64,000 nt of DNA from Perna viridis. Lineage: Eukaryota. Positions 6,348-62,623 of the stretch are shown in pieces. Every line of letters starts with the position of its first letter. Within the stretch, counting starts at the first letter, position 1. The translations under genes and the position numbers were made by a program. Location of the stretch: positions 22,532,103 through 22,596,102 of the forward strand of contig CM074519.1 in the NCBI GenBank assembly GCA_037379345.1, written 5' to 3'. Under the pieces are notes generated by a model that made no database searches, was not told where the DNA came from, and saw nothing but the letters and a program-made list of their open reading frames with translations.

Positions 6348-6613
6348 CTATATAATTACAAATTGTCTAAAGGTCAATGACCTTCTCGAAGATGTATGAC
6401 CTATCAAAACAATGTAAACTTCGTTGACATTTTCCGGTAAAAGAAACTCTAACGACGGTTTTGATACTGTAGTCAGCTTGACGATATCGGTACTCTCTTT
6501 GGTCGATCCGATTGAAACTTCAAATGTTGTTATGACTGGGTCCATTCTGAAAACCATATCCCATGTTATCTTGTAATATTCTGTTCTTAAATGCTTAATA
6601 GCAATTGGGAAAC
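6348..6613 (-). CDS. Gene A exon 20 (terminal, TAG stop)
   Basis: 266 nt as in gene B; ends LTFRQFVII*. Confidence 0.9.
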
Positions 6614-59800: not shown

Positions 59801-62623
59801 AATTTCTGAAATATTGCAATGTCCTAGATTGTCACCTTTGGTGGCCATTTTATAAATGGTGGCAATCAGGTAAAAATAAATGATACGAACTCCGAAATTT
59901 CAATGAGACACAGCAAACAACAAAGTTTCATTAAAATTGCCCACTAAATAAAAATGTTATAAGCGTGAGAAAAAAGTTGATTTTGGTAACCATGAAATTT
60001 TCCGTTTTTCGATGGCAATGGACAACATATCGATCCGATCTGTTTGAATAATTTTATTAGACTCATTAAGTACTACCACCTTACCAAATTTCAAATTTCT
60101 AGCCACCTAGATTTCCGAGATATTGCAATGTCCTCGATTATGACCTTTAGTGACCATTCTAAAAGGCAGCATGATTTCTGAGATTTCAATGAGACACAAC
60201 ATACAATAAATTTTCACTAAAATTTCCCACTGAATAAAATTCGTAGATGTGAGAAAAAGGGGATTTTGGTATTCATAAAATTTTCAGTTTTTTAAGTTGC
60301 CATGGCAACGGACAACATATTGATTTTTTTTTTGCTCAATTCTCTTAGCCTCATTGAGTTCTATCATCATATTAGATTTCAACTTTCTAGTCACCCAGGT
60401 TTTCAAGATATTGCAATATCCTAGATTATGACCTTTAAGCGTTTCATGGAACAGTAGTCAAAAGATCTGATTCATCCTTTCTCAATACGATCTACCTACA
60501 TACCAAAATCCAGTTCATTCCCTTTTGCGATGTTCTCTAAAATTTCTGGACAAAAATCATTAGAAGAAAAAAAAAGAAGAAGAAACAGAAGAGTAATAAT
60601 ATGTCACCCGACATTTGCGTAGGGCGACATAATAAAAAGAAGAAAAAAATGGCAATATGTCGCCTGATATTCGTCTTAATACATCATGATATGTTTTAAA
60701 TTGTGCTAGAAGCAAGTCACATTTCGCTTTCCCCAAATGTTCTCAGAACCCAAAAATATTGAATTATGCATACAATTTTGATGGCATGCACATCTTTGGA
60801 GTAAGTCCTAACTTCTTACAAAGTTTCGTTCTAATCCCCTCTTTACATGTAATTACCGAAAAAACGAGCAGACAATTGCAAGTTCACCGGTTAAAATAAT
60901 AATAATGATAATAATAATACAGAAGAAACAGTGCAAAAAGAAGTAGTGTTTTTAATAATAATAAACGAAGCAAAAACAATAAGTCGCAAAACTTTGTTTT
61001 GGCGACTAAAGTATGATTACTGACACGCTTTCCAAATAATGCTAGCTGCTTGATATCAATATAGAGGTCTCAGTCCTCGTCACCATTTTCAGTACGAACT
61101 TTATCATTGACATTACAGTCACCAAGAGCCTAATTTGAGTTTGTAGGGAGATTAACTTGTAATACCGAGTATGGACCTTTATAGGTTTCGTATTTCTAAC
61201 AAAAAACAAAATGTGTTCTGTCTGTTCATAGCTCGCATCTTAAAACATTTTGAAAAGTAATGAAGAAAAAAAAACCTAGTTGAAGCATGACCCTGCATGT
61301 AAATACATGTCTTTGGTTGACGTAATACTGTTAATATCATGATTTTCAATTTTAAGAATAGCTAAATATATAACTTTGTCCTCTTACATGTACAGGTTAC
61401 ACTTGCCTCATGTTAGGTTAATGCGTTACCCTTCTATAAAAAATATATCTATCGTATTGGAAATCTAACTTACAATAGTCTTTACTCCGATAGCCTTTTC
61501 TATAAGAACAGTATTGTTTTCATAAGTACCAAATGTCCATTTCATCTCTCGAACGCCACTGTGAACATCGAATGCTTTAAACTGTATTGCTATTTCCGAT
61601 AAGTCTATACTATGATGTACAAAAAGTTGTTTGTGTCCGTTCCGTGTTAACCAAATGTCAGATATTTCCGGAACAGAACGGTCAATGTACACGGAAACAC
61701 TGTCATTGAGTGTGTGATTCATTATATCTGAAACTTGTAAGTGTAATGTAAACTCTTCACCATCAGCTTTTGCTGGATCAGCACATAAAGTTTCTGAAGT
61801 AAAATTTCCAACACTACCAGAAAGGATTTGATTGCCATCTCTAGTAAGAACAAAATAGAATTGTATAAGTCCATTAACATTCATTGTACCGGAAATTGGT
61901 AAAACACCAGTAGTTTGATCATACACTCCATTAATACCGCGTTCGTGCAAAATTGGTCGGAGGGGATTGTTTTTTATATAGAAATTGTTGAAAAATCTCT
62001 TCGCCCAAGAGAAGCACAATTGTTCATGATTGGTTTGCCAACGATATTGTGTAAGATTAGAAGCCGTCTGAACACGAACAGGATTAAAATTGTTTATTTT
62101 AATTCTAGACGTATTGTCATACAGAACAAACCGTCTCGCTTGTTTGACATTGTTGGCAAAATCCTTCACCTCAAGTAAAACTGCGTATAGCATTGGACTC
62201 CGTTGGGGTAACTCGATAACAATGTTAGTTTTATTTTTCGAAGTCGTCCAATTCCCCACAGATGTTTTATCTCTCATAAGAAGTGCTGGATCTGAAGATG
62301 TAACTTCATACAGCTGAATTTCGTAACTCTCTATGCCAGAGGCTAATGCAATTGCATCTGAATTATAGTCCGGATAAGGATCGATCCAGCCATCTATGTC
62401 AAGATGTATAGTACTTGCAGATGTAACTCTTGTGGACAGTTTCAGAGGATTGTCGTTACAGCGTCCTCTTTCAAAACAATGCGTTGGAGCTGCATTATCA
62501 TATATATAGCAAAGTCTTCTGAAAGTTTCTGTTTTTTCATATGTTATGTTCTTTGTTCCATTTCGAGTCAAATCTTTAGGTTTCAAATAGCCCCCTCCTT
62601 TTAATACAAACGTTAGGCATAAT
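37432..62623 (-). CDS. Gene B: tandem paralogue of gene A, exons 8-20 (5' exons outside window); one +1 frameshift in exon 17 (assembly error or recent pseudogenisation)
   Basis: Complement of 61474-62623, 48714-49914, 46876-48230, 46012-46675, 45401-45517, 44378-44682, 43664-43771, 43297-43453, 42874-43057, 40886-42481, 39391-40662, 38436-38936, 37432-37697. Splice positions and phases match gene A; the only lesion seen is the T8 run at 41451-41458. Confidence 0.85.
38436..38936 (-). CDS. Gene B exon 19
   Basis: Overlaps ORF 38383-38931; 501 nt. Confidence 0.9.
39391..40662 (-). CDS. Gene B exon 18
   Basis: Within ORF 39386-40756; 1272 nt. Confidence 0.9.
40886..42481 (-). CDS. Gene B exon 17 (frameshifted at 41451-41458)
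   Basis: Split into ORFs 41440-42396 and 40851-41501; 1596 nt = A (1604) minus 9 plus 1. Confidence 0.85.
42874..43057 (-). CDS. Gene B exon 16
   Basis: 184 nt; ITWKQFFIYGVRYY...DTSPPIPG. Confidence 0.88.
43297..43453 (-). CDS. Gene B exon 15
   Basis: WYGFDDPHS; 157 nt; GT donor. Confidence 0.88.
43664..43771 (-). CDS. Gene B exon 14
   Basis: ATNGAGLRSYTVSLPLVIDSSPPPVGHV; 108 nt. Confidence 0.88.
44378..44682 (-). CDS. Gene B exon 13
   Basis: 305 nt (A plus two codons); tag/gtaag. Confidence 0.88.
45401..45517 (-). CDS. Gene B exon 12
   Basis: TNKGFDDVLSF...AYYATVT; 117 nt. Confidence 0.88.
46012..46675 (-). CDS. Gene B exon 11
   Basis: Within ORF 45974-46693; 664 nt. Confidence 0.9.
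46876..48230 (-). CDS. Gene B exon 10
   Basis: Overlaps ORF 46867-48108; 1355 nt. Confidence 0.9.
48714..49914 (-). CDS. Gene B exon 9
   Basis: Overlaps ORF 48634-49857; 1201 nt (A plus one codon). Confidence 0.9.
50030..51730 (+). mobile_element. Non-autonomous Helentron/HINE-like repeats (two or more pieces)
   Basis: Shares core blocks (tttctagccacc, gatattgcaatg, ccaagtttc, ggcagccatt) with 58060-60560; ends in hairpin AGTCGCAAAACTTCGTTTTGGCGACT plus (AAT)n. Confidence 0.6.
53865..54480 (+). mobile_element. Pearl/DINE-1-like (HINE) relics with degenerate ACGG microsatellite
   Basis: ggactgatggacggac and cggacggaccgacgaaccaacgaacggacg tracts, followed by a terminal hairpin-like atatccc...gggatat. 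Confidence 0.55.
55524..55633. repeat. 55-bp tandem duplication within the Tigger 5' region
   Basis: taaaaacagaaaatgaaaacttcaaaata(t/g)gttgtgccgaccgcttgtgttctat x2. Confidence 0.9.
55761..56411 (+). CDS. Truncated Tigger/pogo transposase: NLS, CENP-B-type HTH and Tc5-type HTH, no DDE domain
   Basis: PAKRRR; LTLEDKI...LSEKFGVGKTTVSDILK; WFRQAR...PISGPILQSKA...FKASNGWLEKFKSRH...VSGESA; homology ends near 56270. Confidence 0.85.
   Translation: MSKPPAKRRRIELTLEDKINLIKESESFPKPSQKSLSEKFGVGKTTVSDILKRKSEYLANYDNNDNLKKFRFGNKSKHDNLNDLMWDWFRQARDKAIPISGPILQSKALEFASQLDISDFKASNGWLEKFKSRHAIKAFTVSGESAGVNVETVDEYRSRIPEICSDFEPCKEYDYSLIKNNNTTFTFILDLNTNIHKYLSKDVCRNIQTVQSDNHQ
56850..56918. repeat. Compound (AAT)n/(AAG)n/(AATAAG)n microsatellite
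   Basis: Directly visible; follows the hairpin at 56823-56849. Confidence 0.92.
56912..61010 (+). mobile_element. Array of head-to-tail Helentron/HINE-like elements with internally repeated cores
   Basis: Shared heads (A)GAATTGCCA..GC.AGCAA at 56916, 58740 and 59767; repeated core ctagccacctag..gagatattgcaatgtcctagattatgaac; terminal GC-rich hairpins at 59667, 59728, 60601 and 60982. Confidence 0.65.
57016..58058 (+). mobile_element. 5'-truncated Penelope-like (Naiad-like) RT element nested in a HINE-like element
   Basis: MLKFLIDNIFV, QQTVGIPMGTNCAP, FRYIDD, SASYLDL; host sequence breaks at acagacctattt and resumes at caaatttgtagc (intact version at 58836-58862). Confidence 0.9.
61474..62623 (-). 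CDS. Gene B exon 8
   Basis: Overlaps ORF 61465-62586; tag/gtaagt; homologous to A exon 8. Confidence 0.88.

What the first reader, a model, noticed from the sequence alone, without database searches (positions are those of the whole stretch)
6348..62623. Tandem array of giant (~3250 aa) secreted EMI-EGF-FN3-repeat proteins of unknown function
Seen: two co-oriented paralogues with identical intron positions. Gene A builds into a full 3249-aa ORF: signal peptide, EMI-like domain (CGFLWISRC...CCPGY), two EGF-like domains, then about 19 beta-sandwich-like modules with recurring W-x-G-F-x-D-x-E/H-S-G-I, G-T-x-x-G-x-D-D, N-x-A-G-L and D-x-T/S-P-P motifs. It has many N-x-S/T sequons and no hydrophobic anchor. 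Established: EMI+EGF N-termini mark the EMILIN/MEGF/Nimrod-Draper group of matrix and recognition proteins. Inference: a soluble, rod-like glycoprotein of roughly 360 kDa with a diversifying head, expanded as a tandem family, possibly for pattern recognition, mucus or shell matrix. I know of no functional description of this architecture.
Basis: partly seen in the sequence, partly recalled or inferred. Interest (0 to 1): 0.8.

Follow-up and report, generated by a model that had tools for sequence, protein, structure and literature searches.

The report
Giant secreted FN3-rod genes in mussel
The window holds two neighbouring, real and transcribed mussel genes for 3,250-residue secreted proteins built almost entirely of fibronectin-III-type domains. 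They belong to a family conserved from sponges to amphioxus whose function I found described nowhere.

Summary
Gene A lies on the minus strand (30962-6348) and splices from 20 exons into a 3,249-aa open frame: 363 kDa, 49 N-x-S/T sequons, no membrane anchor.

- **Transcription:** transcript contigs from three studies join exons 4 to 9, so the head is linked to the body.
- **Assembly gap:** it lies in intron 1 and breaks no codon.
- **Gene B (62623-37432):** it has exons 8-20 at the same splice positions. Its head exons lie up to about 17.5 kb beyond the window end. It has one +1 shift in an A8 run.
- **Fold:** AlphaFold models of exons 8 and 17 (pLDDT 85-86) match fibronectin-III domains. A module profile finds 18 of them.
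- **Domain calls:** Pfam confirms one EGF domain. It does not confirm EMI.
- **Family:** full-length collinear relatives of about 3,000-3,500 aa, all named "uncharacterized", occur in molluscs, an annelid, a nemertean, echinoderms, hemichordates and amphioxus. Longer or partial relatives occur in a sponge and cnidarians. Their heads differ (VWA, SRCR, TSP1, lectins).
- **Position in the family:** A and B sit in a mollusc-only branch. That branch has at least 12 copies in this genome.

Function is inferred: an extracellular rod whose head chooses the partner. The scan had already met this family on another piece of this genome (s1-755824).

The parts
6348..30962 (-). Gene A, complete: 20 exons, 3,249 codons plus stop
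   Evidence: Splice model. It is collinear over its full length with the abalone, oyster and freshwater-mussel proteins P0005, P0015 and P0011.
30913..30962 (-). Exon 1: ATG and a signal-peptide-like hydrophobic start (MENIISILLFGSLSFL)
   Evidence: Read. The donor is GT and the phase fits exon 2. It was not run through a signal-peptide predictor. The joint to exon 2 was not seen directly in reads.
30442..30572 (.). Assembly gap (N), inside intron 1 of gene A
   Evidence: It lies between exon 1 and exon 2, so no codon spans it. Its letters were not looked up elsewhere.
30154..30270 (-). Exon 2: first half of the EMI-like cysteine module (…CGFLWISRC…)
   Evidence: Pfam gives no family for it.
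27621..27700 (-). Exon 3: second half of the EMI-like module (…CCPGY…C)
   Evidence: Pfam gives only a weak EGF_STAB1-2 hit (E 0.016) and no EMI hit.
25716..25814 (-). Exon 4: EGF domain 1
   Evidence: Pfam EGF scores 21.7 bits (cut-off 21.5), EGF_2 scores 22.1 (22.1) and EGF_Teneurin scores 24.8 (24.3). The joint to exon 5 is seen in contigs.
24650..24775 (-). Exon 5: second EGF-like cysteine module
   Evidence: Six-cysteine pattern read from the sequence. Pfam gives no hit. Joints on both sides are seen in contigs from 3 studies.
21378..21647 (-). Exon 6: start of the conserved body
   Evidence: Joints 24650|21647 and 21378|21274. It aligns to P0001 residues 47-135.
21154..21274 (-). Exon 7
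   Evidence: Joints 21378|21274 and 21154|20364.
19203..20364 (-). Exon 8 (387 aa): about 3.5 FN3-type beta-sandwiches, one with a long insert
   Evidence: AlphaFold model has pLDDT 86.3 and pTM 0.74. Foldseek top matches are SiiE, RbmA and contactin FN3. VIA-align gives Z 9.3, rmsd 2.4 over 94 residues to NCAM FN3.
17752..18949 (-). Exon 9 (399 aa): FN3 modules. Used to count paralogues and build the tree.
   Evidence: Its start is joined to exon 8 in contigs. The genome holds 14 matches. Tree.
15940..17294 (-). Exon 10 (451 aa): FN3-type modules and divergent linkers
   Evidence: The protein-atlas neighbours are molluscan fn3 clusters.
15102..15765 (-). Exon 11
12262..14568 (-). Exons 12-16: 14568-14452, 14089-13791, 13131-13024, 12780-12624, 12445-12262. 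These small exons cut FN3 modules at recurring phase-1 positions. Intron 15 has a GC donor in A and a GT donor in B.
10303..11906 (-). Exon 17 (534 aa): three FN3 modules, a conserved cysteine knot (C-x4-C-x3-C-x-C-x-C-x6-C) and further FN3 modules
   Evidence: Alignment A1 shows near-invariant cysteines. AlphaFold model has pLDDT 84.7 and pTM 0.76. Foldseek top matches are fibronectin Fn7B89, contactin-2 and LAR.
8319..9590 (-). Exon 18 (424 aa): FN3 modules around a short divergent segment of about 110 aa. This segment stands where the pan-metazoan branch has a DUF642-like jelly roll.
7128..7628 (-). Exon 19
6348..6613 (-). Exon 20 with the stop codon. The protein ends straight after the last FN3 module.
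   Evidence: Gene B has its stop at the same place. Relatives in other phyla also end after the last module, without a hydrophobic tail.
37432..62623 (-). Gene B, exons 8-20. B exon coordinates: 62623-61474, 49914-48714, 48230-46876, 46675-46012, 45517-45401, 44682-44378, 43771-43664, 43453-43297, 43057-42874, 42481-40886, 40662-39391, 38936-38436, 37697-37432.
   Evidence: Head exons (EMI-like, EGF-like and the exon 6 equivalent) lie 0.5-17.5 kb beyond the window end.
41450..41465 (-). A8 run in gene B exon 17 that carries one extra base relative to gene A, shifting the frame
   Evidence: Exon length is 1596 against 1604 nt in A. This is either an assembly error or a recent inactivation. It was not resolved.
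55761..56411 (+). Remnant of a pogo/Tc5-type transposase ORF inside the 11.5-kb intron 8 of gene B
   Evidence: Pfam HTH_Tnp_Tc5 E 4.9e-20 and CENP-B_N E 7.5e-11.

Best explanation
Shown:
- Gene A, and almost certainly gene B, are genuine spliced protein-coding genes.
- Each encodes a protein of about 3,250 residues and 363 kDa, with a signal-peptide-like start, many N-glycosylation sequons and no membrane anchor.
- The protein has a small cysteine-rich head (an EMI-like module plus two EGF-like modules). After it come some 25 fibronectin-III-type beta-sandwiches in a fixed order, interrupted by one conserved cysteine knot.
- The genes belong to an old animal family that is annotated but uncharacterised. 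Its full-length members are about 3,000-3,500 residues long.
- Within that family they sit in a mollusc-only branch. In that branch the family's jelly-roll module has been replaced by a short divergent segment. This branch has multiplied to at least 12 copies in this mussel, mostly in tandem and with exchange between copies.

Inferred:
- The body is a long extracellular rod with fixed joints between modules. It acts as a scaffold or spacer.
- The exchangeable N-terminal head decides what the rod binds or how it assembles. Here that would be protein-protein docking through the EMI-like and EGF modules.
- Different paralogues therefore tie different partners into a matrix or surface coat.
For: Gene reality:
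- A 20-exon open frame.
- Intron-free joints in contigs of three studies, with zero depth in the introns.
- dN/dS of 0.19-0.42 between A and B on every large exon.

Secretion:
- A hydrophobic N-terminus and no transmembrane-strength segment.
- Relatives from five phyla start with signal-like peptides and end straight after the last module.

Fold:
- Two AlphaFold models with pLDDT 85-86 whose best PDB matches are FN3 tandems.
- pTM of 0.74-0.76 for fragments of 4-5 domains, which fits fixed inter-module geometry.

Family:
- 1,158 cluster representatives at E<=1e-3 and 218 at E<=1e-30.
- Relatives are collinear end to end, with near-invariant columns along the whole body.
- All the relatives I looked up are named 'uncharacterized' or 'hypothetical', apart from a few borrowed automatic names such as Hemicentin-1 and SCARF2.

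Head exchange (Pfam):
- VWA in oyster and three SRCR domains in a brittle star.
- TSP1 in scallop.
- C-type lectin in Mya.
- SUEL lectin with EGF_CA, and PLAT.

Branch and expansion:
- Tree, copy count and jelly-roll comparison.
Against: - No functional datum exists. The tissue of expression is unknown because run names are coded. One RNA-seq run gave no read over 1.56 Gb read.
- The head is not a Pfam EMI domain.
- Rigidity is inferred only from pTM. No calcium or interface analysis was possible.
- Strong conservation of each individual module (about 34% identity between mollusc and amphioxus proteins over 57% of the length) hints that the body does more than act as a spacer.
- The runs are labelled 'RNA?' by guess. 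Their cDNA nature is deduced from the joints.
Confidence: 0.6

Rival explanations
1. Humoral or mucosal recognition molecule. The rods would be soluble immune factors in haemolymph or mucus. Their heads would recognise microbes or damaged self, and the many paralogues would widen the repertoire.
For: - Heads elsewhere in the family are classic recognition modules: SRCR, C-type lectin, SUEL lectin, TSP1.
- The family has expanded in mussel, amphioxus and starfish, lineages known for large innate-immune gene families (my own knowledge).
- The copies are tandem and mosaic.
- Expression seems conditional: contigs are present in several studies but there were no reads in one run.
Against: - dN/dS is 0.19-0.42, with no sign of diversifying selection at exon scale.
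- A recognition factor has no obvious need for a conserved 3,000-residue body.
- There are no challenge or tissue data.
- This gene's own head (EMI-like and EGF) is not a lectin.
Confidence: 0.2
2. Structural protein of a secreted hard or fibrous product (shell matrix, periostracum or byssus), made by mantle or foot glands.
For: - The branch containing genes A and B is mollusc-only in my sampling.
- FN3- and EGF-bearing proteins are reported in bivalve shell proteomes, as the papers listed show. I did not match their sequences to this gene.
Against: - The wider family occurs in animals without shells or byssus: amphioxus, nemertean, hemichordate, sponge.
- The sequence lacks the low-complexity, acidic or DOPA-type composition typical of shell and byssal proteins (my own knowledge). 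Its pI is 6.25 and it has no repeats other than folded modules.
- There is no proteome link.
Confidence: 0.1
3. Gene B is a recently dead copy, and part of the array is decaying or is an assembly duplication instead of a working family.
For: - A +1 shift in an A8 run in B exon 17.
- An 11.5-kb intron in B loaded with transposon remnants.
- A fragment with four stops at 22.697 Mb.
- Three copies whose exon 9 is 98-99% identical to A's, 77-138 kb apart, which could be collapsed or duplicated haplotypes.
Against: - All 13 B exons keep AG and GT at the homologous splice sites and are otherwise open.
- dN/dS is well below 1.
- A single extra base in a homopolymer is a common long-read error (my own knowledge).
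- B's head exons are present upstream.
Confidence: 0.3

Closest known systems
Uncharacterised giant FN3-array proteins of marine invertebrates (for example Haliotis XP_071093296, Mizuhopecten LOC110461352, Branchiostoma LOC118405866, Acanthaster LOC110986013)
   Same: - Collinear over the whole length: gene A residues 37-3231 align to residues 40-3262 of the abalone protein at 32% identity.
- Same size class, signal-like start, lack of an anchor and cysteine knot.
   Different: - Heads differ from species to species.
- The pan-metazoan branch has a DUF642-like jelly roll at about residues 2,800-2,990. Gene A's branch has replaced it with a divergent segment of about 110 aa.
- None of these proteins has a described function.
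Tenascins
   Same: Secreted matrix proteins with EGF-like repeats followed by an FN3 array. Tenascin FN3 domains are among the fold matches.
   Different: - No C-terminal fibrinogen globe. The protein ends in an FN3 module and Pfam finds none.
- Pfam lists no N-terminal assembly or heptad domain.
- Module number and order are fixed in this family, not variable.
- Tenascins are chordate-only (PMC11401434 abstract). This branch is molluscan.
EMILIN / multimerin and CED-1 / Draper / MEGF10 / SCARF (N-terminal EMI followed by EGF)
   Same: An N-terminal cysteine module ending in CCPGY…C, followed by EGF-like modules. One amphioxus relative was automatically named SCARF2.
   Different: - Pfam EMI is not detected.
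- No coiled coil or gC1q domain as in EMILINs.
- No long EGF array, membrane span or cytoplasmic tail as in CED-1 and MEGF10 (what those families contain is from my own knowledge).
Giant bacterial beta-sandwich adhesins and matrix scaffolds (Salmonella SiiE, Vibrio RbmA)
   Same: - They are the top Foldseek matches for exon 8.
- Two consecutive modules superpose on SiiE at rmsd 4.7 over 180 residues.
- The Pfam models that weakly hit the family are bacterial or phage Ig-like types: Ig_J_second, Ig_Rha78A_N, Big_3.
   Different: This is an animal gene with introns and an EGF head. It has no secretion-system signals. Calcium dependence was not tested. The similarity is at the level of fold.
Hemicentin-1 (the name given to the scallop relative OWF42246)
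   Same: A very large secreted matrix protein made of beta-sandwich repeats.
   Different: Pfam lists no VWA head, immunoglobulin array, G2F domain or fibulin-type tail for the window exons or the scallop protein. The scallop name looks like a borrowed automatic label.

Membership tests
Conserved invertebrate giant FN3-array family (unnamed) | End-to-end collinear similarity to full-length members of about 3,000-3,500 aa | tested here: met
   - tblastn of P0005, P0015, P0011 and P0001 covers exons 4/5-19 in order.
- blastp of the model against P0005 gives residues 37-3231 to 40-3262 at 32% identity.
- phmmer of exon 17 gives single stretches of about 530 aa in many proteins of 3,000-3,500 aa.
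Conserved invertebrate giant FN3-array family (unnamed) | Secreted: signal-type start, no membrane span, ends after the last module | tested here: met
   (hydropathy scan only; no dedicated predictor was available).
Conserved invertebrate giant FN3-array family (unnamed) | Mid-body cysteine knot | tested here: met
   Near-invariant C321, C326, C335, C337, C344 and C352 in alignment A1, whose first row is the window's exon 17.
Conserved invertebrate giant FN3-array family (unnamed) | DUF642-like jelly-roll module near residue 2,800-2,990 | tested here: not met
   - It is present in amphioxus P0033 (E 6.5e-6) and Solemya P0211 (27.8 bits against a cut-off of 27).
- In gene A and its mollusc-only branch, a shorter segment without the conserved residues takes its place.
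- This is a branch difference. It does not exclude gene A from the family.
Fibronectin type III fold | Seven-strand beta-sandwich that superposes on solved FN3 domains | tested here: met
   - Exon 17 model: Foldseek E 3.5e-11 to fibronectin Fn7B89.
- Exon 8 model: VIA-align Z 9.3, rmsd 2.4 over 94 residues to NCAM FN3.
Pfam fn3 (PF00041) by sequence | Score above the gathering cut-off | tested here: not met
   - The window exons give no hit, or E 0.17 at best.
- Orthologues pass: 68 bits in P0005 and 68.9 in P0008.
- The modules are therefore divergent FN3 domains.
EMI domain (PF07546) | Match to the EMI profile | tested here: not met
   - No EMI hit at E<=10 on exon 2, exon 3 or the contiguous head of the abalone orthologue P0005.
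- None of the precomputed Pfam lists for the 79 and 24 relatives holds it.
- The two exons could only be tested separately, which weakens the test.
EMI domain (PF07546) | Cysteine pattern ending in CC-x-G-[WY]…C | tested here: met
   CCPGY…C in exon 3. CCPGW in the abalone and CCSGY in the oyster relative. The comparison with the EMI consensus is from my memory and is only a lead.
EGF domain | Pfam EGF-type models at or above cut-off | tested here: met
   Exon 4: EGF scores 21.7 against 21.5, EGF_2 22.1 against 22.1 and EGF_Teneurin 24.8 against 24.3. Exon 5 gives no hit.
Tenascin | C-terminal fibrinogen-related globe | tested here: not met
   Pfam gives no such hit on any exon. The protein ends in an FN3 module.
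Hemicentin | VWA head, long Ig array, G2F domain and fibulin-type tail | tested here: not met
   None of these appears in Pfam scans of the exons or of the scallop protein that carries the name.

The most novel reading that the evidence does not exclude
This is an undescribed, ancient animal matrix system: one fixed scaffold of about 3,000 residues and 25 or more modules, kept from sponges to amphioxus. I did not see it in vertebrates, insects or nematodes among the named hits. Onto this scaffold evolution plugs interchangeable N-terminal binding heads (EMI/EGF, VWA, SRCR, TSP1, lectins). Molluscs would have spun off a branch without the sugar-binding-type module, and mussels would have multiplied it into a repertoire of differently aimed extracellular rods.
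Probability: 0.3. Interest if true: 0.75.

Novelty: new variant of a known kind. Interest (0 to 1): 0.5.

Why it matters
Proteins of more than 3,000 residues that keep their length, module order and many single residues across animal phyla are rare. They usually mark a basic structure, as laminin, fibrillin and hemicentin do. This family is annotated in many genomes, yet every member I looked up is named 'uncharacterized' or carries a borrowed name. The papers I could search contain no description of it.

Three observations are concrete starting points for experiments:
- The head is swapped for different binding domains while the body stays fixed.
- A mollusc-only branch has lost the jelly-roll module.
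- That branch has expanded to a dozen copies in a mussel.

If the function turns out to be an apical or connective matrix component missing from vertebrates and ecdysozoans, it would fill a gap in the picture of how animal extracellular matrix evolved. For this window alone the result is more modest: a well-supported gene model of a known kind of protein (EGF plus an FN3 array) in an unstudied family.

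Tried and rejected
- **Pfam on ten large exons.** It found nothing above noise, so the FN3 call had to come from relatives and from folds.
- **PDB sequence search of exon 17.** Only chance hits.
- **Literature.** Searches by six and then six more locus or accession names found no paper. 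'EMI domain + fibronectin type III + mollusc' found none, and 'DUF642 + fibronectin type III' found none. Bivalve shell-proteome papers mention FN3 proteins, but I could not tie their sequences to this gene. The echinoderm matrix review mentions EMI only for collagen XXVI.
- **Raw RNA-seq run X21.** No reads on the stretch, so strand, level and ends of the RNA could not be read.
- **Loose ends at 21647, 21475, 21821 and 24812 in the contigs.** They match nothing in the window or in the 40 kb upstream. They probably come from other near-identical paralogues or alleles.
- **First splice scoring.** It favoured internal donors. I replaced it with boundaries set by homologue coverage and by gene B.
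- **A downstream anchor exon.** Rejected. Only three short ORFs lie in 1-6300, and one of them looks like a repeat. The stop is shared by A and B and falls at the family's common end.
- **Diversifying selection.** Rejected at exon scale.
- **The careful tree search.** It did not finish in time, so the quick tree is reported.
- The joined 3,249-aa protein was built and used only inside scripts (length, composition, module profile, local BLAST, dN/dS). It was never sent to a database search or fold tool. Searches and folds used single exons by reference.

Full report
**What the window holds.** The window is G000 contig 9, 22,532,103-22,596,102. Earlier notes on this genome call it a mussel. It is AT-rich at 27-39% GC. 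All long open stretches of the finding lie on the minus strand.

**The assembly gap.** The N run at 30442-30572 was checked first.
- Read on the minus strand, an ATG at 30962 opens a 50-nt exon (MENIISILLFGSLSFL) that ends at a GT donor.
- The next coding piece starts after an AG at 30270 and holds the motif CGFLWISRC.
- The gap therefore sits inside intron 1. No codon crosses it, and the splice phases on its two sides fit.
- What the gap leaves open is only whether exon 1 and exon 2 truly belong to one locus. I did not see that joint directly.
- Indirect support comes from one transcript contig (X1, record 8) that carries 462 letters 5' of exon 5. Exons 2-4 account for only 296 of them.
- I did not look for the gap's letters in other copies.

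**Gene A model.**
- Boundaries were set by contig joints, by coverage with full-length relatives and by comparison with gene B.
- The result is 20 exons, 9,750 nt and 3,249 codons plus a stop.
- All introns are GT-AG except intron 15. There gene A has GCAAGT where gene B has GTAAGT.
- The product is 363 kDa with pI 6.25, 88 Cys and 49 N-x-S/T sequons. Its most hydrophobic 19-mers score only about 1.5 on the Kyte-Doolittle scale, which is below transmembrane strength.

**Transcription.**
- Twelve runs from five studies hold 25-42% of the sampled words of 15900-24900. This is close to the exon share of that stretch.
- Laying three of them (three studies) gave depth only on the exons.
- It also gave joints with CT..AC ends (GT..AG on the minus strand) at 21647|24650, 21273|21377 and 20364|21154.
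- Loose ends matched exon 4 at 25718-25747 and exon 9 at 18919-18948 exactly.
- Exons 4 to 9 are thus joined in RNA, so the head is tied to the body.
- The runs are only guessed to be RNA, but intron-free joints at splice sites show they are cDNA.
- A raw-read RNA run gave nothing, which fits restricted expression.

**Gene B.**
- It is collinear with A from exon 8 to exon 20.
- AG and GT stand at all 13 homologous boundaries. Length differences are multiples of three except in exon 17.
- In exon 17 an A8 run carries one extra base compared with A and shifts the frame. This may be a homopolymer error or a recent lesion.
- Its intron 8 is 11.5 kb long and holds a pogo/Tc5 transposase remnant.
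- Its EMI-like, EGF-like and exon-6-like exons lie 0.5-17.5 kb past the window end.
- dN/dS between A and B is 0.19-0.42 on every large exon, so both copies have been under purifying selection.
- dS is 1.23 in exon 8, 0.24-0.38 in exons 9-13 and 0.55-0.80 in exons 17-20. This mosaic confirms the scan's separate note s1-770135 and points to exchange between copies.

**What the protein is made of.**
- Pfam sees nothing in the large exons.
- It confirms EGF in exon 4 but not in exon 5. It gives no EMI hit on exons 2 and 3 or on the contiguous head of the abalone orthologue. The head is therefore 'EMI-like' by cysteine pattern only.
- A module profile built from the gene finds 18 modules of about 105 aa.
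- The AlphaFold model of exon 17 used 29 natural relatives. It reached pLDDT 84.7 and pTM 0.76. Its best matches are fibronectin Fn7B89, contactin-2 and LAR.
- The model of exon 8, which lacks most of the motifs, reached pLDDT 86.3 and pTM 0.74. It matches SiiE, RbmA and contactin FN3, and NCAM FN3 at Z 9.3.
- Counting the stretches the profile does not cover, the protein has roughly 25 beta-sandwich modules. It also has one cysteine knot with near-invariant cysteines.

**Relatives.**
- phmmer of exon 17 against 1.84 billion cluster representatives gave 1,158 hits at E<=1e-3. Many are proteins of 3,000-3,500 aa matched in a single stretch of about 530 aa.
- Named members come from bivalves, gastropods, the annelid Owenia, the nemertean Lineus, starfish, a brittle star, a crinoid, hemichordates and amphioxus. 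There is also a longer sponge protein and partial or larger cnidarian proteins.
- All are named 'uncharacterized' or 'hypothetical', or carry borrowed names (Hemicentin-1, SCARF2, ADGRL2).
- No vertebrate, arthropod or nematode protein appeared among the named hits. This is an observation, not a proof of absence.
- Proteins from bacteria and chytrid fungi share only the module type.
- The relatives have no anchor and end after the last module.
- Heads differ: VWA (oyster), three SRCR domains (brittle star), TSP1 (scallop), C-type lectin (Mya), SUEL lectin with EGF_CA (amphioxus), PLAT (abalone).

**Two branches of the family.**
- A quick maximum-likelihood tree on the exon 9 region splits the family into two clades, each with SH-aLRT support of 100.
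- One clade spans the phyla and includes other mussel genes. The other is mollusc-only in my sampling.
- All 11 copies from this genome that I placed in the tree form one group inside the mollusc-only clade, together with one Mytilus coruscus protein.
- The pan-metazoan branch has a DUF642-like jelly roll near residues 2,800-2,990. Gene A's branch has a shorter, unrelated-looking segment there.
- The genome has 14 exon-9 matches on contig 9. They lie at 22.255, 22.335, 22.473, 22.550 (A), 22.581 (B), 22.666 (two matches, one split exon) and 22.697 Mb (a fragment with stop codons), plus 19.29, 33.35, 34.53, 34.58, 34.80 and 44.64 Mb.
- Three of them are 98-99% identical to A.
- The scan's earlier report s1-755824 describes the other branch on another piece of this genome. 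My results agree with it and add the branch split.

**How it most likely works.**
- Shown: a secreted, glycosylation-rich protein of fixed module order, under purifying selection, with an exchangeable head.
- Inferred: the body is a long rod with fixed joints, since pTM is 0.74-0.76 for multi-domain pieces. The head sets the binding or assembly partner, and paralogues provide differently aimed rods in a matrix or surface coat.
- The rivals are an immune-recognition role and a shell or byssus role. Neither can be excluded without expression and proteome data.

**Verdict.** The gene is a new variant of a known kind of protein (an EGF plus FN3 matrix protein), in a family that is widespread, conserved and unstudied.

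Noticed in passing
window 55761-56411 (+) and 57117-57557 (+): Intron 8 of gene B holds a pogo/Tc5-type transposase N-terminus (HTH_Tnp_Tc5 and CENP-B_N). It also holds an ORF with a YIDD-like motif that looks like a reverse-transcriptase fragment but has no Pfam hit.
   Followed up: partly
window 5692-5825, 25317-25597, 26523-26880 and 57588-58058; also the ORF at 3949-4254 (+): The same dispersed repeat (75-90% identity) sits downstream of gene A, in intron 4 of gene A and in intron 8 of gene B, in both orientations. The 3949-4254 ORF repeats the peptide of the 57117-57557 ORF (…KDLEIKNTTDTVKSASYLDLHLEIDGKGK…).
   Followed up: no
window 12619-12624 (-): Intron 15 of gene A uses a GC donor (GCAAGT). 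Gene B has GTAAGT at the same position.
   Followed up: partly
window 21647, 21475, 21821 and 24812 (loose ends): Transcript contigs join an exon 6 at least 95% identical to gene A's exon 6 to a different upstream exon. Its translation, …YNASTALCQ, resembles the end of an EGF2 exon. That exon is not in the window or in the 40 kb upstream. It probably comes from another near-identical paralogue or allele.
   Followed up: partly
G000:C9 22.255, 22.335 and 22.473 Mb (L004, L002, L003): Three further copies have an exon 9 that is 98-99% identical to gene A's, spaced 77-138 kb apart. They are either very recent segmental duplications or haplotype copies placed in tandem by the assembler.
   Followed up: no
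L016, about 39.2 kb beyond the window end (+ strand): An EGF-like exon on the opposite strand matches gene A's EGF1 at 58% identity. It may be the head of a further, inverted family member near the stop-containing fragment at 22.697 Mb.
   Followed up: no
relatives P0003 and P0253: A metagenomic protein of 5,874 aa and an octocoral protein of 5,485 aa combine a vitellogenin/lipid-transport N-domain (PF01347) with the same FN3 module type.
   Followed up: no
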